IMG/VR virus record: IMGVR_UViG_3300027759_000045 | Location: 248,001 to 312,000 of that record | Length of the DNA: 64,000 nt | Direction: 5' to 3' (one strand) | Shown here: positions 8,262 to 20,869 of the stretch, piece by piece | How positions within the stretch are numbered: position 1 is the first letter of the stretch | Layout: every line of letters starts with the position of its first letter | Notes under the pieces: generated by a model | Told to the model about the DNA's origin: nothing | Database searches by the model: none | The model's input: only the letters and a program-made list of their open reading frames with translations | Translations under genes and position numbers: made by a program

Positions 8262-9306
8262 CATATCAAAGTTCCGCAAGGACATTACCAAAAGTATCCA
8301 AGGCCTGAGTATCGGATTTAACGATCCAACAGACTGGATTGGCACAGGCAACTATGCATTGAACTATCTTATCTCTGGAGACTTCAACAAAGGTATTCCC
8401 TTAGGTAAAGTAACTGTGTTTGCCGGTGAATCGGGCGCAGGTAAAAGTTATATCTGCTCCGGCAATATTGTAAAGAACGCACAAGAACAAGGCATCTTTG
8501 TTATTCTTGTGGACACAGAAAACGCACTTGATGAATCATGGCTACATGCATTAGGTGTAGACACCGGTCCGGCAAAGTTGCTTAAACTTAATATGAGCAT
8601 GATTGATGACGTTGCTAAAGCAATTTCAACGTTTATGATTGACTACAAAGCCCTGCCCGAAGAAGAACGTATGAAAGTTCTCTGGGTCATTGACTCGCTA
8701 GGCATGTTGTTGACTCCCACAGACGTTAACCAGTTTGAAGCAGGTGACATGAAAGGTGATATGGGTCGTAAACCCAAAGCACTTACTTCGCTTGTTCGTA
8801 ATTCTGTCAATATGTTTGGCAGTTATAATGTAGGACTAGTTGCCACCAATCATACATACGCAAGCCAAGACATGTTTGACCCAGATGACAAGATTAGTGG
8901 TGGCCAAGGTTTCATCTATGCATCAAGTATTGTGGTTGCCATGAAGAAGATGAAGTTAAAAGAAGACGAAGATGGCAACAAGGTAAGTGAAGTCAACGGC
9001 ATCCGTGCTGGCTGTAAAGTAATGAAAACACGCTATGCTAAACCTTTTGAAGGCATGCAAGTTAAGATTCCTTACTCAACTGGTATGAGTCCGCATTCTG
9101 GTCTGGTTGACTTGGCAGAAAAGAAAAACATTCTCAAGAAAGAAGGCAACAGTTTGGTGTTTGTCACAAGCGATGGTGAAGTGATCAAACAGTTCCGCAA
9201 AAAATGGGAAGCAAATGAAAATGGCTGTTTAGATAAACTTATGGCAGATTTTGCCAACCAGAAAGAAGAAAAAACAGCAATAGACGACACCACAGTGGAG
9301 GAATAA
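8245..9306 (+). CDS. uvsX: RecA-like recombinase UvsX
   Basis: AGESGAGKS, VIDSLG, ISGGQG, MKTRYAKP. Confidence 0.95.
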   Translation: MAKPFDISKFRKDITKSIQGLSIGFNDPTDWIGTGNYALNYLISGDFNKGIPLGKVTVFAGESGAGKSYICSGNIVKNAQEQGIFVILVDTENALDESWLHALGVDTGPAKLLKLNMSMIDDVAKAISTFMIDYKALPEEERMKVLWVIDSLGMLLTPTDVNQFEAGDMKGDMGRKPKALTSLVRNSVNMFGSYNVGLVATNHTYASQDMFDPDDKISGGQGFIYASSIVVAMKKMKLKEDEDGNKVSEVNGIRAGCKVMKTRYAKPFEGMQVKIPYSTGMSPHSGLVDLAEKKNILKKEGNSLVFVTSDGEVIKQFRKKWEANENGCLDKLMADFANQKEEKTAIDDTTVEE

Positions 9307-9307
9307 C

Positions 9308-9577
9308 ATGGCAGTAGATTTAGCAAGCGAAATTTGGAATGAACTCAAACGGTATGTTAACACAGTAGATCGTGCAGAAGCTGCAGAAACTGTGGTACAG
9401 ATCTTGATGGACAATGATGCAGACGTAGAAGATATCCGTGCAGCCTTCAAGGGCGATTCGGATATCAAACGTGCGCTAACCGCATATCTTGACAACGATA
9501 AAGATTATGTAGACGAAGAAGATGCCGAAGAAGACGAAGACTTTGATGACTTTGATGACAAAGACTGGGAAGATTAA
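9308..9577 (+). CDS. Small hypothetical protein with acidic tail
   Basis: 89 aa, GGAA RBS, coupled to uvsX. Confidence 0.7.
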   Translation: MAVDLASEIWNELKRYVNTVDRAEAAETVVQILMDNDADVEDIRAAFKGDSDIKRALTAYLDNDKDYVDEEDAEEDEDFDDFDDKDWED

Positions 9578-10812
9578 TGTCTTTAAAAAAATACTTCCCG
9601 ATTAACTCACAAACCAGTTGTAGGTCAAAATGGTCGTGGAGTACATTATATTTAAATAAAGGTGCTACCGCATCGTGTCATAGGGCTAGTGTTTCTAGTA
9701 TACCAGAAAATTTTGAAGACTTTCATAACACTCCTATTAAAATACAGGATAGGAGTGTTATGTTACAATCTCAATGGCCCGGCAACGGGTGTGAATATTG
9801 TCAAGATATTGAACACAGCGGAGGTATTAGTGATCGTATGTTTCAAAATCAAATTCCAAATGTATACCCTAAAGAACTTGATCAAGACAATACGTTAACT
9901 GTAGTTAATCCTGCGGTGTTAGAAGTATTTTTTTCTAACACCTGTAATCTATCATGCATTTATTGTGATGCAAAACATAGTTCATCAATTCAAGCCGAAA
10001 ATAAAAAGTTTGGAGGTGCAATACTTCCTGAATTAAACTTTGAATACACTGATAACAAATATCGCGAGCTTGTTCCAAAATTTTGGGCATGGCTTGAAAC
10101 ACATAGCCTATCCTTACAACGATTACAAATTTTAGGTGGTGAGCCCTTCTTACAACCTGATGTGTTGAAGCTGATTGAATATTTTGAACAACATCCGCAC
10201 CCAGACCTAGAGTTTAATTTGGTTACCAACCTTATGTTGCCAATCAAGGTTATAGAACCTATATTGAAAAAACTAAGAGATCTAAAACAACAAAATAAGC
10301 TGAAACGAATTGATATCCAAGTCAGTGTCGATTGCTGGGGATCCGCACAAGAATACACACGGCATGGATTTATGTTAGATATTTTTGATCGTAACATGGA
10401 GTTGTTAATCGAAATGTCTGAATTTCGAATCGGCCTATTGTCAACTATAACTTCACTGTCGATTCCCAGCATGCCCGAGTTAGCACAAAAATACAATCAA
10501 TGGTGTACAAAACAAAAAATATTTTGGTACATGCATTTGGTTCTACCTAATAACAAAAGTGTGTTTGATCCCACTATGTTTGATTACTCTGTATTTGCCT
10601 CTAGCTTAGAATCTGTGTATAATTTATTACCTAAGGAAACTTGGGATGACAAAACCACTCTTGAAAGTTTTGATGGCATTGTATCTAAACTAAAAAACAA
10701 ATGTAAAACAGACCTTATAAGACAACAAGGTCTGTTGCAATATCTTGACACCAACGATTACAGAAGAAAGACCAAATGGAAAGACATTTTTTCCTGGTTA
10801 ACAATAGGATAA
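9577..10812 (+). CDS. Radical SAM protein with N-terminal twitch domain
   Basis: SCRSKW..ASCH, CEYC..IE..SDR; CNLSCIYC; GGEPFL; SVDCWGSAQEYTRHG. Confidence 0.9.
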   Translation: MSLKKYFPINSQTSCRSKWSWSTLYLNKGATASCHRASVSSIPENFEDFHNTPIKIQDRSVMLQSQWPGNGCEYCQDIEHSGGISDRMFQNQIPNVYPKELDQDNTLTVVNPAVLEVFFSNTCNLSCIYCDAKHSSSIQAENKKFGGAILPELNFEYTDNKYRELVPKFWAWLETHSLSLQRLQILGGEPFLQPDVLKLIEYFEQHPHPDLEFNLVTNLMLPIKVIEPILKKLRDLKQQNKLKRIDIQVSVDCWGSAQEYTRHGFMLDIFDRNMELLIEMSEFRIGLLSTITSLSIPSMPELAQKYNQWCTKQKIFWYMHLVLPNNKSVFDPTMFDYSVFASSLESVYNLLPKETWDDKTTLESFDGIVSKLKNKCKTDLIRQQGLLQYLDTNDYRRKTKWKDIFSWLTIG

Positions 10813-10815
10813 CAC

Positions 10816-11268
10816 ATGTGGTACAGTAAAGTTACAGCCAATCTTGGACTCATACCAGACTTTATACAACACTATGAGAATGAGTTAGATCTGGCCAAGC
10901 GAGATTGCAAAATTGGTGGTATAGTAGAAAAAAACATCACCGCATTGCCGGGCATCACAGAGCATAGGTTTAATCAGTTGCAAGAAATTGAGGCAGTGCT
11001 TAATTTTCTCAACATTCAACTGCGCAAGATTCGTCGCAAACACTTTCAGAAATATTTGGAAGGATATGCAAGAGCATTAACTAGTAGGGATGCTGAAAAA
11101 TATGTGGATGGCGAGGATGAAGTAATTGACTACGAAACCATTATTAACGAAGTGGCATATTTACGAAATCGATTTTTGGGCATTATGAAAGCAATGGAAA
11201 GTAAAAACTTCATGTTGGGACATGTGGTTAGACTGCGAGCAGCCGGTATGGAAGATATACAGTTATGA
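10816..11268 (+). CDS. uvsY: Recombination mediator UvsY-like
   Basis: 150-aa helical protein with YLEGYARALTSRDAEKYVDG and AMESKNFML; position downstream of uvsX. Confidence 0.75.
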   Translation: MWYSKVTANLGLIPDFIQHYENELDLAKRDCKIGGIVEKNITALPGITEHRFNQLQEIEAVLNFLNIQLRKIRRKHFQKYLEGYARALTSRDAEKYVDGEDEVIDYETIINEVAYLRNRFLGIMKAMESKNFMLGHVVRLRAAGMEDIQL

Positions 11269-12023
11269 CATTCAGAAACGATGACGAAAGTCATGCACAC
11301 AGTTTACAAACACTCAATACCTTGTTTGAGTACGATGACTTTATGGAAAGCATTGGCACACTGGTTGACCTAGGGTGTGGGTCAGGCGCTGATCTAGAAT
11401 GGTGGGCAACTAGAACAACTCGAGACGATGCCCCGATACCCCTGAATATTCGTTGCACAGGCATAGACACAGGTTCCACACCTGCTGTGGTTAAAAAGCA
11501 TTCTAACATTGTGTATCAAAAAATAGATTTTGAAAATACAGAAAATCTGCCTGGCAAGTCAAAGTTTGATGTGTTGTGGTGCCACAATGCATTTCAACAC
11601 TGTATCAACCCACTGGCAACATTGGCCAAGTGGAACGCTATTGCTGAACCGGGCGGCATGTTGATTATGGCAGTTCCGCAAACCACCAACATGGATATAC
11701 GTCAACTGGCATTTGTGCAACCAAATGGATGTTATTATCATCACACTGTTGTGAGTTTAATGCACATGCTGGCTGTCAATGGTTGGGACTGTAATTCGGG
11801 ATTCTTTTTAAAACAACCAGACGACGAATTCATACATGTAATTGCTTATAAGAGTGAACATGCCCCAATGGATCCAAAGACTACTACTTGGTATGAGTTG
11901 GCAGATAAAAACTTATTACCAGAATCTGCGGTAGCAAGTGTAAATCGCTACGGGCATGTAAGACAACAAGATCTTGTACTGTCCTGGATTGACAAGAGTT
12001 TGTCTTGGCTAGGTCAACAATAA
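11265..12023 (+). CDS. Class I SAM-dependent methyltransferase
   Basis: LVDLGCGSG motif I, FDVLWCHNAFQH, EPGGMLI. Confidence 0.75.
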   Translation: MTFRNDDESHAHSLQTLNTLFEYDDFMESIGTLVDLGCGSGADLEWWATRTTRDDAPIPLNIRCTGIDTGSTPAVVKKHSNIVYQKIDFENTENLPGKSKFDVLWCHNAFQHCINPLATLAKWNAIAEPGGMLIMAVPQTTNMDIRQLAFVQPNGCYYHHTVVSLMHMLAVNGWDCNSGFFLKQPDDEFIHVIAYKSEHAPMDPKTTTWYELADKNLLPESAVASVNRYGHVRQQDLVLSWIDKSLSWLGQQ

Positions 12024-12842
12024 ACGTCGAAGTGGCAATCCTGAGGCAATTTCTTCTGTGTACCATTCTGTGTGTGCTAGACTCTCTAGCCACGCAGTTC
12101 GGTCTGGTTTTGCCGGATTGTTGATTGTGGACAAATCTGTATTGCCAACAGGTGCAGCCAAACTACTAGCATGTACAAACGCCGGCACTCCATTTAACAC
12201 AGCCTGTGCGCCAGGTCCACTGTTATGATTGATCACGGCCCATGCTGTTGACAAGCACCGATCATAATCAAAACTGTCATATGTTCCTTGTATGGGCCGA
12301 GGCATCTCGATAACACAGCCAGGAATATCACTGATACGCTGTCTTGGGTGCGGCCTTATAACAATAGGTCTGTCTGTGTGTTTTCTAACAGCATTGGCAG
12401 TTTCGGTTAACCAAGCCACTGTGGGCGGCTGTCCTGTCCATTGCTCAGAATCAGATCGTTGTGCGGCAATCACAATGTTGTAACCAGCATTGGTCCAAGG
12501 CCTAGCTTCCAGTCTCAACTGTGCCGCACGTCCTGGAATTAACTTTTTTCCATAGTATGCATTGTTACCGGTTCCGTTGACACCTAACTTCCAAGTACTG
12601 CCACGACGTAGCATGCCCACCTCAACCACAACAACAGGGCGATTACTGTTGCGGAATGTTTGCCATACGCCTTGATTGTGCTTCATACGACCGTGCCACA
12701 ACTGACTCCAGATAACAGCAACATCTGCTGAACTATCCATGCTGTTGTGTTCGATACCTATGCTGTCAAGTCCTGCACGTACAGCCGCAAACACCGGTGG
12801 GCTGTTAAGCGCACCGTATTGATCAAAAATACTTACTCTCAT
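12009..12842 (-). CDS. Capsule-synthesis (KpsS/KpsC-like) glycosyltransferase paralog 1
   Basis: IVIAAQ, IVIRPHP, INHNSGPGAQAVLNGVPAF. Confidence 0.55.
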   Translation of the reverse strand: MRVSIFDQYGALNSPPVFAAVRAGLDSIGIEHNSMDSSADVAVIWSQLWHGRMKHNQGVWQTFRNSNRPVVVVEVGMLRRGSTWKLGVNGTGNNAYYGKKLIPGRAAQLRLEARPWTNAGYNIVIAAQRSDSEQWTGQPPTVAWLTETANAVRKHTDRPIVIRPHPRQRISDIPGCVIEMPRPIQGTYDSFDYDRCLSTAWAVINHNSGPGAQAVLNGVPAFVHASSLAAPVGNTDLSTINNPAKPDRTAWLESLAHTEWYTEEIASGLPLRRLLLT

Positions 12843-12883
12843 AATATACCCGGTTAAATATACACTTAGTTATAAGGAAAACA

Positions 12884-13690
12884 ATGAGTCGTAAATTCTC
12901 TGTGGTCACTACATTCAACGCATCGGGCTACAAAAAATACGGCAAAAGAATGATCGAAACATTCCTAAAAACCTGGCCAGCAGAAGTTGACTTGATAGTG
13001 TATACCGAAGATTGCATCATTACTGAATCTGCACCCAACTTGCGTGTGTTAGATCTGCACAGTGACAGTCCTGAACTAGTGGCATTCAAAACAAAATGGC
13101 GCAGTGTTCCCAAGGCCAATGGTGATGTGTCTGCTGATCCAACAAGAAGTAATCGCAAAGACGCTGCCAAAGGATTCAAATGGAATGCTGTACGCTTTGC
13201 TCACAAAGTATATGCCATATTTGCCGCTGCCCAGGCCGCAACTGATTGGCTGTTGTGGATGGATGCCGACACTGTGTGCCACAGTCCCATTACACTGTCG
13301 CAATTGCACAATCTATGTCCCGCCACAGCTGATATTTGTTTCTTAGGTCGTAGAGGCAAGTATACCGAATGTGGATTGTATGCTATGAATCTGTGTTCTC
13401 CCGGTACAGTAGACTTTCTCAAAGAGTTTCAGCGTGTGTATGACGATGCAGAGAACGGAATATTCACCATGAAAGAATGGCACGACAGCTTTGTGTTTGA
13501 TGTTGTGCGTAACTCAATGGCATTGGCACAACACGATTGGAGTAGCCATTTGATTTCAGGAGAAGGTCATCCACTTATAAATTCTGACTGGGGAGCATAC
13601 CTGGATCACCTTAAAGGCAGCAGAAAAGATCAAGGGCGTAGCAGAAACACCGACTTGGTAGTAAAAAGAACCGAGGCGTATTGGCAATGA
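12884..13690 (+). CDS. GT-A fold glycosyltransferase
   Basis: VVTTF, WLLWMDADT DxD motif, EWHDSFVF, DHLKG. Confidence 0.65.
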   Translation: MSRKFSVVTTFNASGYKKYGKRMIETFLKTWPAEVDLIVYTEDCIITESAPNLRVLDLHSDSPELVAFKTKWRSVPKANGDVSADPTRSNRKDAAKGFKWNAVRFAHKVYAIFAAAQAATDWLLWMDADTVCHSPITLSQLHNLCPATADICFLGRRGKYTECGLYAMNLCSPGTVDFLKEFQRVYDDAENGIFTMKEWHDSFVFDVVRNSMALAQHDWSSHLISGEGHPLINSDWGAYLDHLKGSRKDQGRSRNTDLVVKRTEAYWQ

Positions 13691-13711
13691 AAATATTCAA
13701 GGAGACTCGCA

Positions 13712-14359
13712 ATGTATGAAAGCCACGGATGGTGGTTCCCGGATACGGAAACACACTTCCCACAAATGCTCAACAAGAGTATCAGCAAAGGCGGCCCTGC
13801 TGAATATCAGTATCAAGTGCGCAACAAGAGTTTGACCTATGTTACTCAGTTCAGAACTGGTATAGATATTGGTGCCAATGTAGGCCTATGGAGTCGATCA
13901 CTTGTGACAAAGTTTGAGCGTGTGATTGCGTTTGAGCCAGTGCCGTTGTTTAGAGAATGTTTACAACGGAATGTTGCAGGCAAGAACTTTGTTATTATGC
14001 CTGTGGCCTTGGGTGATCAAGACACCACTGCACAAATGACCATAACTGAAGGCAATACTGGACACACTCACATAGATCCCGCCAGTATTGGGTCGGGTGA
14101 TACCGCTGTGGTCAAACTGGACAACTTACACATTGATAATGTAGACTATATTAAAATGGACTGTGAAGGATTTGAGTATCGTGTTATACAAGGCGCAGAG
14201 CAGACGATTCGACAATGGCGTCCTGTTGTGGTTGTGGAACAGAAGCCACACGACATGTATTCAAAGCAGTATGGACAATTTGCGGCCATTGGCCTGTTGG
14301 AATCATTTGGCATGCACAAGCTAGCCCAAGTCAAAGACGATTGGATCATGGGATGGTAA
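13712..14359 (+). CDS. FkbM-family methyltransferase
   Basis: IDIGANVGLWS, AFEP, VALGD, IKMDCEGFE. Confidence 0.85.
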   Translation: MYESHGWWFPDTETHFPQMLNKSISKGGPAEYQYQVRNKSLTYVTQFRTGIDIGANVGLWSRSLVTKFERVIAFEPVPLFRECLQRNVAGKNFVIMPVALGDQDTTAQMTITEGNTGHTHIDPASIGSGDTAVVKLDNLHIDNVDYIKMDCEGFEYRVIQGAEQTIRQWRPVVVVEQKPHDMYSKQYGQFAAIGLLESFGMHKLAQVKDDWIMGW

Positions 14360-14940
14360 GTTCTTACTACAAAGAATCAGTCAAACTAGGTGCAGTGTTT
14401 CAACAAGAAAACAAAAGCTGGGACGGCAAAGATACATTTTCATACCATCGACAGATACGAGATGTGGCACAACGTTATAAATGTAAGACTGTACTTGATT
14501 ACGGATGCGGAAAAGGACATCAGTGGGCAGAAACTACAGCATTTTGGCCTGACACTACGCCTATGACGTTTATTAACTATCTTAATGTTGATAGTGTGGT
14601 TCAATACGACCCGTGTGTTACAGAATTTTCCAGCGAACCTCCCGACCAAAAATATGATTTAGTTATCTGCAATCAAGTGTTAACTTACATACCCGATGAT
14701 GATTTAGAATGGGTCAAACAAAGATTAATGAACTTGGCCGGAACAGCTTGTTTTATAGGCATGCATGTTCAACAGCCTAAGGCCAAAAAACAAATATATA
14801 ACAAACAATACTTTTCTGTTGATCGCAGTCAAGATTGGTACAGAGAATTTTTTAGAAACTGGCAAGGTTCAGACTTGCACTGGTGGTTTCGAGATAAACC
14901 GTATAACCCTAATTGGATGAACAATGACACTAATAGATAA
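14353..14940 (+). CDS. Class I SAM methyltransferase
   Basis: VLDYGCGKG, YDP, YDLVICNQVLTYIP; start at ATG 14353 overlapping the upstream gene end. Confidence 0.75.
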   Translation: MVSSYYKESVKLGAVFQQENKSWDGKDTFSYHRQIRDVAQRYKCKTVLDYGCGKGHQWAETTAFWPDTTPMTFINYLNVDSVVQYDPCVTEFSSEPPDQKYDLVICNQVLTYIPDDDLEWVKQRLMNLAGTACFIGMHVQQPKAKKQIYNKQYFSVDRSQDWYREFFRNWQGSDLHWWFRDKPYNPNWMNNDTNR

Positions 14941-15493
14941 AGATTACAAAGACCAACTGGCATACTTGCATCAAGCAGGCAAGTTTAATAACGGACATAC
15001 AGCCTATCCAATTGTCAAAGACTTTATTGAAAAATATCAGCCTACCGGTGTGTTGGACTTTGGGTGCGGGCAAGGAGGACTAATTGCCGCAATCAAAGAA
15101 CTACATCCCACCATTGAGGTTGCCGGATACGATCCTGGCAATCCGCTCTTCCAATATTTACCAAAACGCCCAATGGATACTGTAGTCAGTACAGATGCTA
15201 TAGAACACATTGAGCCTGATTACCTTGATGCTACATTACGCACCATCGATGAAAAAATGCAACGTTGTGGCTTTTTTAGAATTGCCTGTTATCCAGCAAA
15301 AAAACACCTGCCTGATGGGCGCAATGCTCATCTCATAGTTGAATCACCAGAGTGGTGGCGCAACAAAATACAAAGTATTATGGATGTTGATATTGTGTGG
15401 GAAAATATACAAGTGGTAGATAAAACATCAAAATGGCCCAATGTCAAAGGCCATAACTACGATGTTGTTGTTGTAAAACGTCAGGTCAAGTAA
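14924..15493 (+). CDS. Class I SAM methyltransferase (paralog of the upstream gene)
   Basis: VLDFGCGQG, YDPG, DAIEHIEP, NAHLIV. Confidence 0.8.
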   Translation: MTLIDKDYKDQLAYLHQAGKFNNGHTAYPIVKDFIEKYQPTGVLDFGCGQGGLIAAIKELHPTIEVAGYDPGNPLFQYLPKRPMDTVVSTDAIEHIEPDYLDATLRTIDEKMQRCGFFRIACYPAKKHLPDGRNAHLIVESPEWWRNKIQSIMDVDIVWENIQVVDKTSKWPNVKGHNYDVVVVKRQVK

Positions 15494-16410
15494 GGCAAAA
15501 ACTTTTGATATATTTTGCCTGACCGGGCTTCTTCATCACTCCAGTGAGCAGCGGCCAAGTCTTGCACCCATTGCTGACGATCAAATATTACGGGTGATTC
15601 AATGCCGGACACATTTTTATTTGCCACCGCCCAACTCACACAACTTGAATCATCGGCAAACACAGGTATGCCAGCACACACTGCTGCCACACTGGCTGAA
15701 CTATTAAACAGCACCACAGAGTGTGCGTCTACCAGGTTGTCGGTTAGTTTACTATGCTTGGGATCTATAACAGATACATTCCATTTTGCTTTGTATTTTG
15801 GTGATGTAAATTGGTCAAAGTTCTGCATTGCATAAGAACCTGGATGTGGGCGCACAACAATTGCTCTTGTGGTGTACAGCCTTATCTCTTTGATTTTTGC
15901 ATCAAGCCATTGATTGGGATCTAACGACTTCATTGAAAATCCTCCATCACGTTGCATACATATCAATACATGTCCGTTGTTGACCTGTGGCGTGGCCAGT
16001 TGTAAAGATAATCGTTGGCTGATCTCTTGCCATTTCTCAGAGCCGCTATTTTTATTTGCATACTCGGCACAATCATAAAACGGTCCACCTAGGCTGTATC
16101 TTAAGTAAGTGCTGGAGTCATCAAGATATTTCCAACAACTGGCATCAATGCACATGGTCTTGAATTTGTGGCGTTGTTGCTCGGTAATAATTTGTTTTCG
16201 TAACGCAATGTTTGGTCCACCAGTGCTTGCTGTTGTCCATCCTAGTATCACTGCTAATCGTGCAGGTTGGTATTTGAAATCCCATTCAACATGAACACGA
16301 TGCCCTGTTTTAGTGACTCCCGCGGCAAAGCTTTCTAAGCATGCAATTTTCCTAGAATACTTCCGAGGATTTGCCACGCTACTGACGTATACAACTACAT
16401 CAAAGGTCAT
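15481..16410 (-). CDS. KpsS/KpsC-like glycosyltransferase paralog 2
   Basis: VLICMQ, IVVRPHP, LFNSSASVAAVCAGIPVF. Confidence 0.55.
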   Translation of the reverse strand: MTFDVVVYVSSVANPRKYSRKIACLESFAAGVTKTGHRVHVEWDFKYQPARLAVILGWTTASTGGPNIALRKQIITEQQRHKFKTMCIDASCWKYLDDSSTYLRYSLGGPFYDCAEYANKNSGSEKWQEISQRLSLQLATPQVNNGHVLICMQRDGGFSMKSLDPNQWLDAKIKEIRLYTTRAIVVRPHPGSYAMQNFDQFTSPKYKAKWNVSVIDPKHSKLTDNLVDAHSVVLFNSSASVAAVCAGIPVFADDSSCVSWAVANKNVSGIESPVIFDRQQWVQDLAAAHWSDEEARSGKIYQKFLPYLT

Positions 16411-17476
16411 TTAAGATCTGCCATGCCGTGCCATCCCGCATCTCAGCTTCAGTAAACTGACAATATGCAATATGTCTTGCCCATGCGTAAACTTCATCTA
16501 AAGTTGGTATTTTTAAAGATTCTATTTCGCTAACACTATTGCTACACAGTGGCGCGGCCGCATTTGGTCCTAGTGTGATGGCAGGTTTGCCCAATAGCAA
16601 TGCTTCACCGGCTGCAATGCTAGAGAATGTCACTAGACAATGCACATCACGATCTAGGGCCAACTCCAGGGTATCATCAACAAGCCTGGCTGTACGACCT
16701 GGCTTGGTACGCACTATAATGGGACGATCCGTATGTTGTTTTATTTCTGCTTGTGTTTGTTCTAACCAATCTTCTAATATGATATCATAGTTGTTCAATA
16801 GCTTTTGACTAGGAGGAGCAATCAGGATATTTGTTCCTCTTCGCATTTTTGCAATGCTAACACCAGTTTTTTCAAATCTGTCTCCGGGTCGTTCTACAAT
16901 GTCACCAAACCATTGTACATCATTTTTGGTAATGCGATGATACAATTTTTTCTTAACGTTGCCAAAATATCCTGTGTCAATGTAATAGAAATCTCTCCCC
17001 GCAGCCTGACAGGCCTCCATTTGTTTCCCTTGAGCAATCCCACGTATCACCACCGGTGTTGATGTAGTTTCTTCTCGAGCCCAGGTGCTTAATCTGCCGC
17101 CGGAGCCTTGTATAAAACTTTGCAAAATTGGATCGTACCGTTTTCCCTTTTTCTCGTACATGAGTTCAAAATCCTTGCTATCACTCGATATGGCTGCTAC
17201 ATTTCCGGTGTTTAGTAATTTGATCCGATCCACAATAGAATCAATGCTGGCGCCATAGTAATGCCCATCAGGATCTACCCTCCATTTTAGTATATCTCTA
17301 AAAATACTTTTGATAGGGCCAGTGACCATATCCAACTCGTGTATTGCTAAAGGAGGAGGAGGTGGGTTAACATCTGGTTTTTGTTTCTTTCCAAACGCCA
17401 ATTCCCAATTGCTTGCAAATGTATTTGCATCAACACTTTTAGGTCTTGGTGTTGATCCTTTACCAACAGCACTCAT
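16400..17476 (-). CDS. KpsS/KpsC-like glycosyltransferase paralog 3 with N-terminal extension
   Basis: FYYIDTGYFG, IIVRTKP, VTFSSIAAGEALLLGKPAI; start MSAVGKG at 17476 (ATGA overlap). Confidence 0.55.
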   Translation of the reverse strand: MSAVGKGSTPRPKSVDANTFASNWELAFGKKQKPDVNPPPPPLAIHELDMVTGPIKSIFRDILKWRVDPDGHYYGASIDSIVDRIKLLNTGNVAAISSDSKDFELMYEKKGKRYDPILQSFIQGSGGRLSTWAREETTSTPVVIRGIAQGKQMEACQAAGRDFYYIDTGYFGNVKKKLYHRITKNDVQWFGDIVERPGDRFEKTGVSIAKMRRGTNILIAPPSQKLLNNYDIILEDWLEQTQAEIKQHTDRPIIVRTKPGRTARLVDDTLELALDRDVHCLVTFSSIAAGEALLLGKPAITLGPNAAAPLCSNSVSEIESLKIPTLDEVYAWARHIAYCQFTEAEMRDGTAWQILNDL

Positions 17477-18159
17477 TCTACCAACCTTTGCTGGCAATAT
17501 TCAGTAAGTATGCGTTCTCTGTGCCACTCATCACCTTGAGGGGTGTCAGCAAACTCTTGGAAACAAGGCGTGCCTAGCGTGTAGTGTAGCAGTTTAGCAT
17601 CTTTGTTCACGCCATATTCATCAGGTAACCAGTTCCATTCAGGGGGTAATTCTCCAATACGTTCATCATCTATCCACGAGAAGCGGTGGAGCTCACTGCC
17701 TGTGGATTTTTGTATAAATTCTGGCGTGAGCTTACGATTAGGAAAACTATTACAGTTCCATAAGATTACACTGCTCCAATTCTTACGTGGGTAGTCTTCA
17801 TTTCGTGCTCCTAAGTATTTTACAGGCATGCGTGTTTTGTAATCGTGTTTGACCACCATAACATCATTATAAGGATTTCGTAACTCCCACAGTTCAGTAA
17901 TATCACCGCGTACAATCATGTCACCATCAATAAAGATTGCCCATCCTGTGTATTCTTGCAGGTGAGGCACAAGAAATCGTGTGTAGATAAAGTGATTACT
18001 GCCATCTGTGTGCGTTTCTTCGTAGTCTCGAAACAAGTTTAAGGCCACTGGAATAATAGCCACAGGCTTTGATGCATGCCGTATGATTGAGTTGGCACAG
18101 GTGTGAAAAGCAATGGCTTCTCTTGGATCGTACCCAACGTACACTGGTATTGCTTTCAT
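17473..18159 (-). CDS. GT8-like glycosyltransferase
   Basis: VYVGYDPRE, IFIDGDMI, YPRKNWSSVILWNC, LLHYTLGTP. Confidence 0.75.
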   Translation of the reverse strand: MKAIPVYVGYDPREAIAFHTCANSIIRHASKPVAIIPVALNLFRDYEETHTDGSNHFIYTRFLVPHLQEYTGWAIFIDGDMIVRGDITELWELRNPYNDVMVVKHDYKTRMPVKYLGARNEDYPRKNWSSVILWNCNSFPNRKLTPEFIQKSTGSELHRFSWIDDERIGELPPEWNWLPDEYGVNKDAKLLHYTLGTPCFQEFADTPQGDEWHRERILTEYCQQRLVE

Positions 18160-18911
18160 CGTCGTTCAATATCCTCTTCCACACAGTCTTCACCGTATTG
18201 AATTTCGATTAGTCGAAGCGGTTGATCAGTTTCGTTGCACAACATGTGCCACTGATTTTTTTTAATCCAGACGTAATCATGCACAGCAAAGTGTCCAACA
18301 AGATCGTGATCGCTGGAATTATCCAAGGTATACACCGCGGCTTCTCCTTCGGCAACAAACCAAAACTCAGCACGTTGATCATGGCGTTGCATGCTTAGAC
18401 ATGTCTTGGGTGCCACAGTTAGTTCTTTGAGTTTGGTGGTTGCACCAACTTCGTGTAACACACGATAGTAACCCCAGGCACGTGAGGTCCGGGGAGTTTT
18501 CCACTCCTCTAGTATCCACGAACTTGAATTGGCCTTGTTGTCTCCGCCCACCCCGAACACAAACTCCACATCGTCAAACACCTGTTCTGGAATGTTATCC
18601 GGTGTGCGGTCTCCGCCATTGGCAAAAATGATTTCATCGTTGGGGTATTTTTCTTGGACCAGGCGAATAGCATCACATGCTGTGCCATCTGAGTCATCAA
18701 ACTCAATGACGTCGTCCACCATGTGCAGATTATCTAACACTGTCATACGTTCATGCCAAGGCATAAACGGGCGACCTTTTTTGCGTGTGAGCCACAAATC
18801 TGAGTTTAATCCCACAACCACATGATCACCTAAATGATTAGCATGATTGAGATAGGATATGTGTCCAGAGTGTATAGGGTCAAACCCGCCGGTTACTATA
18901 ACTATTTTCAT
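18156..18911 (-). CDS. Cytidylyltransferase-like (HIGH family) domain fused to mannose-6-phosphate isomerase type II-like cupin
   Basis: TGGFDPIHSGH, ANGGDR, SSSWIL; RAWGYY, SMQRHDQRAEFW, EIQYG. Confidence 0.85.
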   Translation of the reverse strand: MKIVIVTGGFDPIHSGHISYLNHANHLGDHVVVGLNSDLWLTRKKGRPFMPWHERMTVLDNLHMVDDVIEFDDSDGTACDAIRLVQEKYPNDEIIFANGGDRTPDNIPEQVFDDVEFVFGVGGDNKANSSSWILEEWKTPRTSRAWGYYRVLHEVGATTKLKELTVAPKTCLSMQRHDQRAEFWFVAEGEAAVYTLDNSSDHDLVGHFAVHDYVWIKKNQWHMLCNETDQPLRLIEIQYGEDCVEEDIERR

Positions 18912-18948
18912 AAAGATATTTATGTGTGTATATAACGGTAAATATCAA

Positions 18949-19671
18949 ATGATGCCCGATAGCAACCCACTAGACTGTGCCTGTGTGATACACGGCGACG
19001 GATATACCTGGGATTATGTAGAACGACTGCACAGTATGTTGTGTAGGAATCTAAGTCGCCCAGTAAGACTGCATGTTTATACAGAAGCAAACAGAATAGT
19101 TCCAGACCATATGATCAAACATGCTTTGATTGATTGGGGCTTTGCAGGTCCTAAAAAATCCTGGTGGTATAAGCTACAGTTGTTTAATACAGAACATCAT
19201 TCGGGTCCTTTACTGTACTTTGATCTAGACACCGTAATTACAAAAAACATTGATTGGATTTGGCAATTACCACAGCGACATTTCTGGGCAGTGAGAGATT
19301 TTAGATATCTGTGGAAAAATACTTGCACAGTATCGAACACCAGTGTGATGTGGTGGAACACTGAACACTATCAGCATGTTTGGAAAGAAGTGGTTAGCCA
19401 AGATATTAGGCAATTTACCAGCAAATATCGAGGTGATCAAGACTTGATCTCAGCAATAATACCAGTTGGAAATCGTAGATTTTTTAACACGGACTGGGTT
19501 AAAAGTTGGCGTTGGCAGTGTTTGGATGGCGGGTTTAATTTTTCAAAACGCAAGTACTTGGCTCCCAACACTGGAACTGTAGTAGATGACAATACCAGTA
19601 TTTTGGTGTTTCACGGCAGTCCAAAACCACACGAAATCACAGACCCGGCGGTAATAGATCATTGGCAATGA
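18949..19671 (+). CDS. GT-A fold glycosyltransferase
   Basis: WWYKLQLF, LLYFDLDTVI, NTSVMWW, GDQD, FHGSPKPHE. Confidence 0.7.
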   Translation: MMPDSNPLDCACVIHGDGYTWDYVERLHSMLCRNLSRPVRLHVYTEANRIVPDHMIKHALIDWGFAGPKKSWWYKLQLFNTEHHSGPLLYFDLDTVITKNIDWIWQLPQRHFWAVRDFRYLWKNTCTVSNTSVMWWNTEHYQHVWKEVVSQDIRQFTSKYRGDQDLISAIIPVGNRRFFNTDWVKSWRWQCLDGGFNFSKRKYLAPNTGTVVDDNTSILVFHGSPKPHEITDPAVIDHWQ

Positions 19672-19699: not shown

Positions 19700-20254
19700 A
19701 TGACTCAGAGATTATTCAAATTAAAAGGCAACCTTAGCGTTCTACCGGCAACAGGGACAGTAACAGTAAATGGTACTGAAGTATTCAACGGAACATTTAG
19801 CGAGGGTGCCATTGGCGAGCCCGATGGTTTTTTGTGCGAATTTGCATATACATTTGACGACTCAGCTGGTACAGATACTCAATTGCCAGTGGTGGTAACA
19901 TGTGCTTCTGGAGTGGCACATGTTGGCATGTTCAAATACAATTATGCAAAAATTATTAATCCTGCATTAACCCCAGAAGAACTTGCATATGTTACTTCGG
20001 GCACTATATCGTCGGCTCCGGCCCAAATAAAAGCAGACGTAGCAGCCAAAGGCGGCTGGTATATTCATGACGAAACTACATTTGCATATGGGTTGACACC
20101 AGAGCTGTGTGACGATAACCGAACAACAGAAGTAATAAATGGAGTTCTGCTTCCAGAAACAGACGGACACTTATATATCTATATGGCCGCCGCATCAGTG
20201 CTTACATTCACAACAATTGTGTTTTCAAGTGTTAACCCGCCAGCACCTGTGTAA
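19700..20254 (+). CDS. Hypothetical beta-rich protein, possibly virion
   Basis: 184 aa, GGAG RBS, TAAATA at 19672-19677. Confidence 0.55.
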   Translation: MTQRLFKLKGNLSVLPATGTVTVNGTEVFNGTFSEGAIGEPDGFLCEFAYTFDDSAGTDTQLPVVVTCASGVAHVGMFKYNYAKIINPALTPEELAYVTSGTISSAPAQIKADVAAKGGWYIHDETTFAYGLTPELCDDNRTTEVINGVLLPETDGHLYIYMAAASVLTFTTIVFSSVNPPAPV

Positions 20255-20275: not shown

Positions 20276-20304
20276 AAAAACCCTGCATTATGTAGGGTTT
20301 TTTT
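20276..20304 (+). terminator. Rho-independent terminator
   Basis: AAAAACCCTGCA-TT-ATGTAGGGTTTTTTT stem with T tract. Confidence 0.8.
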
Positions 20305-20308
20305 ATGG

Positions 20309-20337
20309 TTGACTGAAAATTCCCAATTTGCTATAAT
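20309..20337 (+). promoter_or_regulatory. Early sigma70 promoter
   Basis: TTGACT-17-TATAAT preceded by TGC. Confidence 0.85.
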
Positions 20338-20367
20338 AGTGGCATACTAAGTAAAAAGGAACACAAG

Positions 20368-20577
20368 ATGGGTTACATGGTAGTTGACACCACAGACCAA
20401 ATGCGTCAAAAATACGGTCCTCGTCCTGGCCTAGAAGGGCCGTTTAACTTCTCTGGACAAGTGTTGTATTATGACAACAAACAAGGCGCCTACTACGATC
20501 CCACTACAGATTTTTACGTAGAACAGGCAGAGATGGATATAATCAACAACAGACTGTACGAATTGCTTAAAAAATAA
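20368..20577 (+). CDS. Small hypothetical early protein
   Basis: 69 aa, AAGGA RBS, GLEGPF..YYDNKQGAYYDP. Confidence 0.75.
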   Translation: MGYMVVDTTDQMRQKYGPRPGLEGPFNFSGQVLYYDNKQGAYYDPTTDFYVEQAEMDIINNRLYELLKK

Positions 20578-20613
20578 GCAGATTTTGTTGTAAAAAAGCC
20601 ACAATTCAAGTGG

Positions 20614-20642
20614 TTGACCGAATATTCTCAATTTGCTATAAT
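20614..20642 (+). promoter_or_regulatory. Early sigma70 promoter
   Basis: TTGACC-17-TATAAT; near-identical to 57302-57330 through to the RBS. Confidence 0.85.
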
Positions 20643-20671
20643 ATAGCATAGATTAACAAAAAGGAACCAAA

Positions 20672-20851
20672 ATGCAGACAGCCACAGCAATCAAAGTTAT
20701 ACAAAAAGATGCAGAATTTTTAGGTATGGGATTTTTGGAAATGATGCAGTTTATCCAAAAGAGTCCACTTGCACAGACACAAAAAACAATGGAAGCATAT
20801 CGTGCAGTGATGGAATCGGGTGCCAAGATGTTTGCCCCGGTTGACGTTTAA
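20672..20851 (+). CDS. Small hypothetical early protein (59 aa, not in the ORF track)
   Basis: MQTATAIKVIQKDAEFLGMG...APVDV; AAGGA RBS and its own promoter. Confidence 0.7.
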   Translation: MQTATAIKVIQKDAEFLGMGFLEMMQFIQKSPLAQTQKTMEAYRAVMESGAKMFAPVDV

Positions 20852-20869
20852 TTCTACATCTGCTATAAT
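20841..20869 (+). promoter_or_regulatory. Early sigma70 promoter
   Basis: TTGACG-17-TATAAT preceded by TGC. Confidence 0.85.

What the first reader, a model, noticed from the sequence alone, without database searches (positions are those of the whole stretch)
11265..19671. 8.4-kb glycosylation/methylation island with three KpsS/KpsC-like paralogs
Seen: four SAM methyltransferases (one FkbM, a tandem paralog pair), three GT-A/GT8-like enzymes, three minus-strand paralogs sharing R(P/T)(H/K)P and S..A..A...G.P motifs, and a HIGH-type nucleotidyltransferase fused to a PMI-type cupin, in divergent and convergent blocks with TAAATA boxes. Known: KpsS/KpsC (GT107) are CMP-Kdo transferases of capsule priming, and FkbM enzymes O-methylate sugars. 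Inference: the phage makes and transfers its own activated sugar(s), building a methylated glycan on the virion or host surface (receptor masking). DNA hypermodification is an alternative.
Basis: partly seen in the sequence, partly recalled or inferred. Interest (0 to 1): 0.65.

Follow-up and report, generated by a model that had tools for sequence, protein, structure and literature searches.

The report
Jumbo-phage glycan-building island, KpsC-fold enzymes
A freshwater jumbo phage carries a conserved 8.4-kb gene cassette for building a methylated sugar chain, including three copies of a large, almost entirely viral and unannotated enzyme family that has the fold of bacterial capsule Kdo-transferases but lacks their catalytic aspartate; what the sugar chain is attached to is still unknown.

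Summary
Window 11265-19671 is an uninterrupted run of 11 genes: four SAM methyltransferases (one FkbM), three DxD-type GT-A enzymes (a GT8, a GT8-like, a GT2-like), an HxGH nucleotidyltransferase fused to a PMI-type cupin, and three minus-strand paralogs.

The paralogs are homologous. AlphaFold models of two of them match best, by two independent aligners, the retaining beta-Kdo transferases KpsC (GT107), WbbB (GT99) and KrkA (GT140).

They are not demonstrable members of those families:
- The invariant QXXXD nucleophile motif is absent from all three.
- One paralog also lacks the His of the CMP-binding (K/R)XHP motif.
- Pfam Capsule_synth does not match them.

They belong to a large, mainly viral family (4958 clusters at 50% identity) with two subtypes.

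The phage encodes no Kdo or nonulosonate synthesis or CMP activation. It also has no ThyA- or TET-type base hydroxylase, so DNA glycosylation by known routes is disfavoured.

The cassette sits at the same site, after uvsY, in about 30 related freshwater contigs. Its gene content is mosaic and variable, and a 7-kb block is inverted in some lineages. Late-promoter-like TAAATA boxes precede parts of it.

Best reading: late, cytoplasmic assembly of a methylated, probably acidic glycan, most likely on virion proteins. The acceptor is inferred, not shown.

The parts
11265..12023 (+). Class I SAM methyltransferase (Methyltransf_11). Overlaps the uvsY stop. Present in only some relatives.
   Evidence: Pfam 2.5e-9; distribution across loci.
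12009..12842 (-). Paralog A, 277 aa, a type I KpsC-fold GT-B enzyme. Motifs Q128-R-S-D-S (family consensus QxxxS), R163-P-H165-P and N-S208. It is the most divergent gene of the island between otherwise close phages (40-47% identity).
   Evidence: Atlas nearest named clusters are viral, with PF05159 in 18% of members.
12843..12883 (.). Divergent intergenic region with a TAAATA box at 12855-12860 (+), 29 nt before the start at 12884.
12884..13690 (+). GT2-like GT-A glycosyltransferase, 268 aa, DAD motif.
   Evidence: Pfam GT2 at E 0.004, below cut-off. Orthologues P0370, P0380 and P0398 carry PF00535. Sequence.
13712..14359 (+). FkbM-family methyltransferase.
   Evidence: Pfam 1.3e-17; TIGR01444 1.3e-28, above cut-off.
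14353..14940 (+). Class I SAM methyltransferase (Methyltransf_23). Start revised from 14215 to the ATG at 14353, which overlaps the FkbM stop.
14924..15493 (+). Class I SAM methyltransferase (Methyltransf_23/12).
   Evidence: the orthologue in L007 is 67% identical.
15481..16410 (-). Paralog B, 309 aa, type I. Motifs Q153-R-D155-G-G, R187-P-H189-P and N-S-S. AF2 model pLDDT 86.
   Evidence: Foldseek top hits KpsC, WbbB, KrkA. VIA-align 6mgb Z 11.8, rmsd 4.2 A over 246 residues.
16400..17476 (-). Paralog C, type II, 358 aa from the ATG at 17476 (the open frame reaches 17497). Motifs P-P-S-Q-K and R263-T-K265-P (no His), S-S-I-A-A-x-E. The N-terminal ~95 residues are low-confidence and partly Pro-rich.
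   Evidence: All Foldseek hits with E<=1e-3 are KpsC, WbbB or KrkA. VIA-align 6mgb Z 12.0, 6mgd 11.9, WbbB 10.7, KrkA 9.1, next 8.8.
17473..18159 (-). GT8 retaining-type GT-A glycosyltransferase, DGD motif. The best-conserved island gene (92-94% identity among relatives).
18156..18911 (-). Fusion of an HxGH nucleotidyltransferase (PF01467; closest to RfaE domain II/HldC, ECT and TagD) with a PMI-type cupin (PF01050).
   Evidence: More than 8000 metagenomic homologues share the architecture.
18912..18948 (.). Divergent intergenic region with two opposed TAAATA boxes: 18917-18922 on the minus strand and 18939-18944 on the plus strand.
18949..19671 (+). GT8-like GT-A glycosyltransferase, 240 aa, with DLD and HGSPKP motifs. 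Start revised from 18859. Lies outside the invertible block. Divergent between relatives (50-56% identity).
19700..20254 (+). 184-aa protein with no family match, TAAATA box 28 nt upstream. Not conserved in relatives, so doubtful as part of the cassette.
20276..20302 (+). Strong intrinsic-terminator-like hairpin (12-pair stem plus T run) closing the plus-strand unit.

Best explanation
The region is a conserved, modular glycan-assembly cassette of a clade of freshwater jumbo myoviruses (346.9-kb genome with a T4-like UvsX/UvsY/gp32 core).

Shown:
- Eleven contiguous genes encode one sugar-phosphate nucleotidyltransferase fused to a sugar-phosphate-isomerase-type cupin, three DxD GT-A transferases, three soluble GT-B enzymes with the modified fold of the retaining beta-Kdo transferases, and four SAM methyltransferases.
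- The GT-B paralogs belong to a very large, mostly viral, unannotated family with two subtypes.
- Type I (paralogs A and B) keeps the cytidine-nucleotide (K/R)XHP and Ser motifs.
- Type II (paralog C) keeps the fold but has Lys in place of the His.

Inferred:
- The NTase-cupin supplies one NDP-sugar of manno or heptose type.
- The KpsC-fold enzymes draw on a host-made cytidine-linked donor. CMP-Kdo is the most parsimonious choice in a Gram-negative host.
- Because the Asp nucleophile is missing, the chemistry probably differs from the double-displacement mechanism of KpsC and WbbB.
- The GT-A enzymes extend the chain and the FkbM and other methyltransferases O-methylate or cap it.
- Assembly is cytoplasmic and probably late in infection.
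- The most likely acceptor is a virion protein (capsid, decoration or fibre). This would give a strain-variable, acidic, methylated coat, as in mycobacteriophages and chloroviruses.
For: Gene functions.

Fold of the paralogs:
- Two independent models (pLDDT 86 and 83).
- Foldseek ranks KpsC, WbbB and KrkA first. For paralog C they are all of the hits with E<=1e-3.
- The Foldseek-independent VIA-align also ranks them first: Z 11.8-12.0, rmsd 4.1-4.3 A over 221-246 residues.

Sequence links:
- Best PDB profile hit is WbbB, over the RxHP...NSS stretch (E 0.02).
- 3 of 30 type I relatives hit PF05159 (best 4e-4).
- Atlas nearest clusters are viral 'capsule polysaccharide biosynthesis' clusters (score 0.97-0.98).

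Family size and subtypes: 4958 clusters at E<=1e-3; 75 type I and 74 type II among the top 150.

Functional linkage:
- Natural fusions of the domain with GT8, FkbM and GT4-type domains.
- The same gene partners occur in Pelagibacter phage Mosig (two MTs, GTs, a sulfotransferase).
- They also occur in Caulobacter phage CcrColossus, between a tail gene, a sialyltransferase-like gene, a GT9 and the lysis genes.

Conservation and diversification:
- Same position after uvsY in about 30 contigs, with gain and loss of a fourth paralog, GT25 and extra FkbM.
- Paralog A and the GT8-like gene are 40-55% identical between phages whose neighbouring genes are 89-97% identical.

Timing:
- TAAATA boxes 21-32 nt upstream mark the baseplate wedge, tail sheath, portal and virion structural genes. 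They also precede the starts at 12884 and 19700. Two more lie about 10 nt before the starts at 18911 (minus strand) and 18949.
- The island has no near-consensus sigma-70 promoter, whereas three stand just downstream of it.

Host donor: nearest UvsX relatives all infect Gram-negative Proteobacteria.

Precedents: O-methyltransferase plus GT genes in a virion operon (PMC4351075); methylated capsid glycans and a predicted viral Kdo pathway (PMC9614988).
Against: - No experiment or read data bear on the acceptor. Virion attachment rests on promoter-box inference and analogy.
- The island lies among recombination and replication genes, not in the structural module.
- QXXXD is absent (A has QRSDS, B has QRDGG, C has PPSQK), and C lacks the His that was essential in KrkA. 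Kdo transfer itself is therefore unproven, and C may use another donor or be non-catalytic.
- The phage encodes no CMP-sugar synthetase.
- The NTase substrate cannot be read from sequence: ECT, HldC and TagD score similarly.
- TAAATA as a late promoter is inferred from 10 annotated genes only.
- The host is unknown.
Confidence: 0.45

Rival explanations
1. Host-envelope remodelling. The cassette acts on host lipid-linked glycans. One form is priming a Kdo-type linker on a phospholipid, as KpsS and KpsC do. Another is prematurely capping O-antigen or capsule chains with a beta-Kdo-type residue or methyl groups. Either would change the cell surface, giving receptor masking, superinfection exclusion or less progeny loss on debris.
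For: - The closest structures (KpsC, WbbB, KrkA) all act on lipid-linked or polysaccharide acceptors of the envelope. Terminal Kdo is a known chain-terminating modification (WbbB).
- GT8 resembles LPS/O-antigen enzymes (WbbM).
- Island content varies between strains, as in O-antigen loci.
Against: - No transporter, flippase or membrane-anchor gene lies in the island.
- The late-type promoter boxes argue against a function that needs time for export.
- The phage appears lytic and very large. Seroconversion is typical of temperate phages (general knowledge).
Confidence: 0.25
2. The paralogs are not ulosonic-acid transferases. They are cytidine-diphosphate-linked phospho-alcohol or phospho-sugar transferases of the TagF/TarL kind, fed by the phage's own TagD/ECT-like nucleotidyltransferase-cupin. 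The product would be a teichoic-acid-like phosphoglycan.
For: - The NTase's best PDB hits include ECT (1e-12) and TagD (5e-9).
- TarL, TagF and Bcs3 appear in the structural list at Z 8.5-9.2.
- The absent Asp nucleophile and the PP[ST]xK motif of type II do not fit Kdo-transferase chemistry.
- It would explain why the only activation enzyme in the island is of the cytidylyltransferase-like fold.
Against: - KpsC, WbbB and KrkA outrank TagF and TarL in both aligners, with full-length alignments at about 4 A rmsd. For paralog C they are the only significant Foldseek hits.
- There is no Pfam Glyphos_transf hit.
- The only recurrent Pfam hit among relatives is Capsule_synth.
- NCBIfam and PHROG place the NTase nearest the ATP-using heptose-1-P adenylyltransferase.
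Confidence: 0.15
3. DNA hypermodification. The transferases glycosylate bases of the phage genome and the methyltransferases decorate those sugars, protecting the DNA from host nucleases.
For: - The island adjoins uvsX, uvsY and gp32-like genes.
- Phage gene clusters that put hexose, heptose and apparently Kdo on 5hmC are known. They use LPS-like GTs and a cytidylyltransferase (bioRxiv 10.1101/2023.12.21.572611).
- Late timing also fits pre-packaging modification.
Against: - Every known route needs a hydroxylated pyrimidine, made by a ThyA homologue or by a C5-methyltransferase plus a TET-type oxygenase. The complete 346.9-kb genome has no PF00303 and no PF12851 match.
- None of the four methyltransferases matches a DNA methyltransferase family.
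- The known DNA GT-B enzymes resemble T4 beta-GT, not KpsC.
Confidence: 0.08

Closest known systems
Retaining beta-Kdo glycosyltransferases: KpsC/KpsS (GT107, Pfam Capsule_synth), WbbB (GT99), KrkA (GT140)
   Same: - Modified GT-B fold, and the best structural match for two modelled paralogs.
- Paralogs A and B have (K/R)XHP followed about 45 residues later by an N-S-S/G phosphate-binding turn.
- The spacing D155 to H189 in B is 34 residues, the same as D193 to H227 in KrkA.
- An acidic residue at the end of an N-domain strand, and two invariant N-domain arginines.
- Several single-module paralogs act in one pathway, as KpsS plus the two KpsC modules do.
   Different: - No QXXXD. Type I has QxxxS (Ser 53, Gly 11, Asp 6, Cys 2 of 75), B has QRDGG, and type II has PP[ST]xK.
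- Type II has Lys or Arg where the His stands.
- No Pfam match for the window's proteins.
- No membrane-anchor region was found.
- Encoded by phages that have no Kdo pathway, no KpsMTED exporter and no CMP-Kdo synthetase.
Virion glycosylation cassettes of mycobacteriophages (e.g. Corndog gp35-38) and capsid glycan machinery of chloroviruses and other giant viruses
   Same: Virus-encoded GT-A transferases together with sugar O-methyltransferases. They act in the cytoplasm, independently of host secretory glycosylation. Gene content varies between strains.
   Different: - Those cassettes sit in the structural operon and contain no KpsC-fold enzymes and no NTase-cupin.
- Here the acceptor is not known, and the island lies next to recombination genes.
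Phage DNA sugar-hypermodification gene clusters (T4 alpha/beta-GT; 5hmC and 5hoC glycosylation clusters)
   Same: Phage-encoded GTs related to LPS enzymes, sometimes with a cytidylyltransferase-type activation enzyme. Reported sugars include heptose and a Kdo-like acid.
   Different: Those clusters always accompany a base hydroxylase (a ThyA homologue, or a C5-MT plus TET). Both are absent from this complete genome. Their GT-B enzymes resemble T4 beta-GT.
Bifunctional GDP-mannose pyrophosphorylase / type II phosphomannose isomerase (ManC, AlgA, WbpW)
   Same: A nucleotidyltransferase fused N-terminally to the same PMI-type cupin (PF01050).
   Different: The nucleotidyltransferase here has the HxGH cytidylyltransferase-like fold (PF01467; RfaE-II, TagD, ECT), not PF00483. 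In the cupin the canonical second His of motif 1 is Gln (H-D-Q).
Glycosyltransferase/methyltransferase islands of T4-like pelagiphages and phiCbK-like phages (Mosig_00183-00191; CcrColossus gp126-131)
   Same: They contain a homologue of the same KpsC-fold family next to GTs and methyltransferases.
   Different: One copy rather than three or four, with different partners (sulfotransferase, sialyltransferase-like, GT9). All are annotated 'hypothetical protein', and their function is equally unknown.

Membership tests
Retaining beta-Kdo transferases (GT107 KpsC/KpsS, GT99 WbbB, GT140 KrkA) | Modified GT-B fold (two Rossmann-like domains). | tested here: met
   Models of B and C. Foldseek top hits are KpsC, WbbB and KrkA. 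VIA-align Z 11.8-12.0 at rmsd 4.1-4.3 A. Paralog A was not modelled, but its subfamily profile aligns with that of C at hhalign probability 100%.
Retaining beta-Kdo transferases (GT107, GT99, GT140) | Invariant QXXXD motif: Asp is the catalytic nucleophile and Gln binds the Kdo carboxylate (PMC10148158, PMC12887879). | tested here: not met
   A has Q128-R-S-D-S, and its orthologues have QHARS and QHQKS. B has Q153-R-D-G-G. C has P-P-S-Q-K. Among 75 type I relatives the +4 position is Ser 53, Gly 11, Asp 6, Cys 2.
Retaining beta-Kdo transferases, and CMP-dependent sialyltransferases | (K/R)XHP CMP-binding motif. | tested here: inconclusive
   Met in A (R163-P-H-P) and B (R187-P-H-P). It aligns to the RAHP of WbbB. 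Not met in C (R-T-K-P) or in any of the 74 type II relatives (Rx[KR]).
GT107 (Pfam PF05159 Capsule_synth) | Significant match to the family profile. | tested here: not met
   No hit for A, B or C even at E<=10. 3 of 30 type I relatives hit weakly, best 4e-4. In the Atlas nearest cluster, 18% of members carry PF05159.
Retaining beta-Kdo transferases | Use of CMP-beta-Kdo, with a covalent Asp-Kdo intermediate. | not testable with these tools
   Needs enzyme assays and intact-protein mass spectrometry.
TagF/TarL-type CDP-polyol phosphotransferases (PF04464) | Profile match, and best structural similarity to TagF or TarL. | tested here: not met
   No Pfam hit. TarL Z 9.2 and TagF Z 8.6 (C-domain only) rank below KpsC and WbbB, and both are absent from the significant hits for C.
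Phage DNA glycosylation clusters | A co-encoded generator of a hydroxylated pyrimidine: a ThyA homologue, or a C5-MT plus a TET/JBP oxygenase. | tested here: not met
   PF00303 and PF12851 are absent from the complete genome, with positive controls ringing.
Glycosyltransferase family 8 | Pfam GT8 match above cut-off, a DxD motif and the C-terminal H-x-x-G-x-x-KP-type motif. | tested here: met
   17473-18159: 34.6 bits against a 24.3 cut-off, with DGD and HYTLGTP. 18949-19671 has DLD and HGSPKP, but only PHROG and Atlas support.
FkbM methyltransferases | Match to PF05050/TIGR01444 above cut-off. | tested here: met
   64.9 bits against a 22.7 cut-off, and 100.2 bits against a 37.7 cut-off.
HldE domain II / HldC heptose-1-P adenylyltransferase | Equivalog-level match to TIGR02199. 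| tested here: not met
   77.5 bits against a 181.5 cut-off. It is a family-level member of PF01467 only; ECT, HldC and TagD score similarly.
Virion glycosylation systems of phages | A glycan covalently attached to capsid or tail proteins. | not testable with these tools
   No cultured isolate is available. The only clue is the late-promoter-like boxes.

The most novel reading that the evidence does not exclude
The three paralogs represent a very large, almost exclusively viral glycosyltransferase family of about 5000 clusters at 50% identity, with two subtypes. It descends from the KpsC/WbbB fold but has given up the Asp nucleophile (QxxxS, or PP[ST]xK with Lys replacing the His). It would therefore use a different catalytic mechanism or donor, for example inverting ulosonic-acid transfer or phospho-sugar transfer. 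Thousands of environmental phages (jumbo phages, pelagiphages, phiCbK-like phages) would use it, together with GT8 and FkbM partners, to coat their virions with strain-variable acidic, methylated glycans.
Probability: 0.3. Interest if true: 0.8.

Novelty: new variant of a known kind. Interest (0 to 1): 0.58.

Why it matters
- **A new enzyme family.** Phage-encoded glycan synthesis beyond DNA glucosylation is barely characterised. Here a hallmark bacterial capsule-priming fold turns up as an abundant, unannotated family of about 5000 clusters at 50% identity, whose nearest named neighbour clusters are 94-100% viral. It has altered catalytic motifs, so it is a candidate new CAZy family with possibly new chemistry.
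- **An ecological role.** If the product decorates virions, it would extend virion glycosylation from mycobacteriophages and giant viruses to widespread freshwater and marine phages of Gram-negative hosts. That bears on adsorption, particle stability, grazing and recognition by defences.
- **A direct test.** The mosaic, invertible, strain-variable cassette behaves like an O-antigen locus carried by a virus. Expressing the 8-kb cassette in E. coli makes the question directly testable.

Tried and rejected
- **Megablast of the island against 50,697 phage records:** no match. Cultured relatives are only distant: UvsX is about 65% identical to Phosso, Atu_ph07, CBB and GAP32.
- **Family scans of the paralogs:** Pfam, NCBIfam and PHROGs gave nothing.
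- **PDB profile search with the type II alignment:** only noise.
- **PDB sequence search for 12884-13690 and 18949-19671:** only noise.
- **The search for related loci on bacterial genomes with alignments A3 and A5:** Whether cellular genomes hold the family was therefore not tested. The Atlas neighbour clusters are 94-100% viral.
- **T4 late promoter TATAAATA:** not enriched in the window, 2 found against 2.8 expected. The shorter TAAATA is enriched.
- **Flanking inverted repeats that could drive the block inversion:** none convincing. A programmed DNA switch is not supported.
- **Apparent 'longer' tblastn matches of paralog B in some loci:** best explained by the adjacent homologous tail of paralog C being joined in, not by an insertion. 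This was not examined further.
- **tRNA and Rfam scans of the window:** nothing.
- **Sequencing runs:** only freshwater and lake DNA metagenomes hold the island, and no RNA run does. Read laying was therefore not used, and expression is untested.
- **KpsS + KpsC-N + KpsC-C analogy for the three paralogs:** considered, but not testable without reference sequences. It is weakened by relatives that carry four paralogs.

Full report
**Source and setting**

The window is bases 248001-312000 of a 346,856-bp IMG/VR virus record with direct terminal repeats, rated complete. Upstream of the finding lie a RecA/UvsX-like gene (8245-9306), a twitch-domain radical SAM gene (9577-10812) and a UvsY-like gene (10816-11268). 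The closest cultured UvsX proteins, at about 65% identity, belong to jumbo phages of Gram-negative Proteobacteria: Sinorhizobium phage Phosso, Vibrio phage 2.275.O, Agrobacterium phage Atu_ph07, and phages CBB and GAP32. The island DNA has no megablast match among cultured phages. It is held only by freshwater and lake metagenomes.

**Observation check**

- *Methyltransferases.* Four class I SAM methyltransferases score above Pfam cut-offs: 11265-12023, 13712-14359 (FkbM, also TIGR01444 at 1.3e-28), 14353-14940 and 14924-15493. The last two are only distant paralogs, at 21% identity.
- *GT-A enzymes.* All three candidates carry a DxD motif.
  - 17473-18159 is a clear GT8 (Pfam 2e-8, WbbM in the PDB, DGD).
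  - 18949-19671 matches phrog_1962 'glycosyltransferase' at 1e-21 and has DLD plus a GT8-type HGSPKP motif.
  - 12884-13690 is a weak GT2 with a DAD motif, and some of its orthologues carry PF00535.
- *NTase-cupin.* 18156-18911 fuses an HSGH nucleotidyltransferase (PF01467) to a PMI-type cupin (PF01050).
- *Paralogs.* The three minus-strand ORFs are truly homologous.
- *Revised starts.* Comparison with orthologues and with stop/start overlaps moves three starts to 14353, 17476 and 18949.

**What the paralogs are**

No Pfam, NCBIfam or PHROG model matches them. A profile of the three gives WbbB, the GT99 beta-Kdo transferase (5FA0/8CSB), as its only near-significant PDB hit. The match (E 0.02) lies exactly over the R-x-H-P ... 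N-S-S stretch.

AlphaFold models were built for paralog B (pLDDT 86) and paralog C (pLDDT 83).

- Foldseek places KpsC, WbbB and KrkA at the top for both. For C these three account for every hit with E<=1e-3.
- VIA-align, which does not depend on Foldseek, gives KpsC modules at Z 11.8/11.6 for B and 12.0/11.9 for C, with rmsd about 4.2 A over 221-246 residues. WbbB scores 10.2/10.7 and KrkA 9.8/9.1. For C these four stand above everything else (next Z 8.8).

A search of 1.84 billion cluster representatives finds 4958 relatives at E<=1e-3 and 3583 at E<=1e-10. None of the 10 representatives whose clusters were looked up carries an informative name, and the word-search hits that carry a name are all 'hypothetical protein'. 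The Atlas neighbours of paralog A are 94-100% viral clusters. One is named 'capsule polysaccharide biosynthesis protein', and in another 18% of members carry PF05159. Three of 30 type I relatives hit PF05159 weakly.

**Membership test**

The literature defines retaining Kdo transferases by three features: an invariant QXXXD (Asp nucleophile, Gln binding the carboxylate), a (K/R)XHP CMP motif with a Ser-Ser turn, and a general-base Glu (PMC10148158, PMC12887879). Among the top 150 relatives two subfamilies appear in equal numbers.

| Subfamily | Window members | First motif | Second motif |
|---|---|---|---|
| Type I | A and B | Q-x-x-x-[S 53 / G 11 / D 6 / C 2]-x-Q-W | R-x-H-P |
| Type II | C, and a fourth paralog D found in relatives | P-P-[ST]-[EQD]-K | R-x-[KR] |

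The two subfamilies are homologous at hhalign probability 100%, E 9e-42. In the window:

- A has QRSDS, and the Asp is not conserved in its orthologues.
- B has QRDGG. D155 lies 34 residues before H189, the same spacing as in KrkA.
- C has PPSQK and RTKP.

QXXXD is therefore not met in any paralog. (K/R)XHP is met in A and B only. The Pfam model is not met. I therefore file the paralogs as a divergent, mostly viral sister group of the KpsC/WbbB fold, not as GT107 members.

They probably work like cytidine-nucleotide-dependent transferases of acidic sugars. Both subfamilies keep an N-domain acidic residue (type I LEVG, type II xDTGY) and two invariant N-domain arginines. These are plausible counterparts of the general base and of the basic pair that flanks the Kdo site. 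That step is inference.

**Donors**

The complete genome has no KdsA (PF00793), KdsB/NeuA (PF02348), NeuB (PF03102) or SIS isomerase (PF01380). Positive controls rang in each search. Any CMP-ulosonate must therefore come from the host, and CMP-Kdo is universal in the Gram-negative hosts of the nearest relatives.

The only activation enzyme is the NTase-cupin. It scores similarly against ethanolamine-phosphate cytidylyltransferase (ECT), HldC and TagD. It is nearest RfaE domain II in NCBIfam, but far below that model's cut-off. The fusion is extremely abundant in metagenomes. Its substrate is open. By analogy with ManC-type NTase-PMI fusions, an NDP-manno-sugar or heptose is the natural guess.

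**Context and evolution**

In about 30 related contigs the cassette sits at the same place, between uvsY and a GT8-like gene plus an AAA ATPase gene. The core order is NTase-cupin > GT8 > C > B > [MTs < FkbM < D < GT2-like <] A >.

- Most relatives carry the fourth paralog D, which the window lacks. Others add a GT25, a second FkbM, a 332-aa protein or a Methyltransf_24.
- The 7-kb block from A to the NTase-cupin is inverted in the window, L025, L031, L032 and L039 relative to equally close relatives. No flanking inverted repeat is present.
- Divergence is mosaic. GT8, FkbM and B are 89-97% identical between phages whose A and GT8-like genes are only 40-55% identical. This is the pattern of specificity-determining genes in O-antigen loci.
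- Natural fusions join the domain to GT8, FkbM and GT4-type domains.
- Homologues in Pelagibacter phage Mosig and Caulobacter phage CcrColossus also sit among GTs, methyltransferases, a sulfotransferase, a sialyltransferase-like gene and a GT9. In CcrColossus this is between a tail gene and the lysis cassette.
- Another viral contig holds a member among three GT29-like genes, a GT10 and a GT8.

**Timing**

TAAATA is enriched upstream of genes: 73 of 204 copies lie within 60 nt upstream of a same-strand start, against 7-18% for hexamers of the same composition. At 21-32 nt it precedes the baseplate wedge, tail sheath, portal, a head-decoration/fibre-like gene and a virion structural gene. It looks like the core of a late promoter.

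Boxes stand 29 nt before the start at 12884, 28 nt before 19700, and about 10 nt before the starts at 18911 (minus strand) and 18949. The island contains no near-consensus sigma-70 promoter. A terminator (20276-20302) followed by three 11-of-12 sigma-70-like promoters (20309-20869) lies just beyond it. Late expression is therefore likely, but it is inferred.

**Interpretation**

- *DNA glycosylation.* The known routes all need a ThyA homologue or a C5-MT plus a TET oxygenase. Both are absent. No island methyltransferase is of a DNA-methyltransferase family. The known DNA GT-B enzymes resemble T4 beta-GT. I give this reading about 0.08.
- *Host-surface remodelling.* This is consistent with what the structural relatives do. 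It lacks any export component and fits late timing poorly. About 0.25.
- *Virion protein glycosylation.* This has precedents: GT plus O-methyltransferase genes in a phage virion operon (PMC4351075) and methylated capsid glycans of giant viruses (PMC9614988). It fits late promoter boxes and strain-level diversification. It is my best guess at about 0.45.
- *Chemistry of the paralogs.* A separate rival concerns the reaction rather than the acceptor: CDP-linked phospho-transfer, about 0.15.

**Verdict**

The feature is a new variant of a known kind: a phage glycan cassette built around an uncharacterised, very large viral branch of the KpsC/WbbB fold that lacks the catalytic aspartate.

Only genetic code 11 was used.

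Noticed in passing
window 12009-18911 compared with L026-L030, L033, L041 (one orientation) and L025, L031, L032, L039 (the other): The 7-kb core block, from paralog A to the NTase-cupin, is inverted relative to its flanks (uvsY on one side, GT8-like plus AAA on the other) between phages whose paralog B is equally close (88-89% identity). No flanking inverted repeat and no invertase gene was found.
   Followed up: partly
window 20276-20869: A strong terminator-like hairpin (20276-20302) is followed by three near-consensus sigma-70-type promoters (11 of 12, each with an extended TG) at 20309, 20614 and 20841. They lie in a 650-bp stretch that holds no ORF longer than 72 codons, upstream of the AAA ATPase gene. 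It looks like an early-promoter cluster.
   Followed up: no
whole genome G000; e.g. G000:C1:175297-178731, 201484-203292, 237770-241063: TAAATA 21-32 nt upstream of start codons marks the baseplate wedge, portal, tail sheath and other virion genes. It is a candidate late-promoter core, shorter than T4's TATAAATA, which is itself not enriched. A second class of boxes sits only 10-13 nt before the ATG, which may mean leaderless or very short-leader transcripts.
   Followed up: partly
window 9577-10812; L004 869-7064 and 20245-; L041 18380-20819: This phage clade carries several radical SAM/SPASM genes around uvsX and uvsY. The one in the window matches NF033640, 'twitch domain-containing radical SAM protein', at 1.5e-61. 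Relatives have three or more. Their function is unknown.
   Followed up: no
L007 13833-14633, L004 13604-14407 (absent from the window): Most relatives carry a fourth KpsC-fold paralog (D, about 266 aa, type II, 43% identical to C) between FkbM and the GT2-like gene. The window's phage has lost it or never had it.
   Followed up: yes
window 12009-12842 and 18949-19671 compared with L027, L032, L041: Paralog A and the GT8-like gene are only 40-55% identical between phages whose adjacent GT8, FkbM and paralog B are 89-97% identical. This suggests allelic replacement or diversifying selection on these two genes.
   Followed up: partly
L012 (ena:ERZ27286360 k119_240009, 83 kb): An unrelated viral contig holds a family member inside a roughly 20-kb glycosylation cluster. 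The cluster has three GT29 (sialyltransferase-family) hits, GT10, GT8, GT2, GT4, UDP-glucose dehydrogenase, epimerases, a stand-alone PMI cupin, asparagine synthase, and a gene with both GT4-type and tubulin Pfam hits.
   Followed up: no
P0128, P0148, P0255, P0260: Natural fusion proteins join the KpsC-fold domain, at the C-terminus, to GT8, FkbM or GT4-type domains. Others (P0126, P0127, P0131, P0136, P0189) have 200-390-residue N-terminal parts with no Pfam match.
   Followed up: partly
window 16400-17497 (minus strand), residues 1-95 of paralog C: Paralog C has an N-terminal extension that is low-confidence in the model, with a Pro-rich linker and short helices. It is partly conserved in orthologues and absent from paralogs A, B and D. 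It could be a docking or targeting segment.
   Followed up: no
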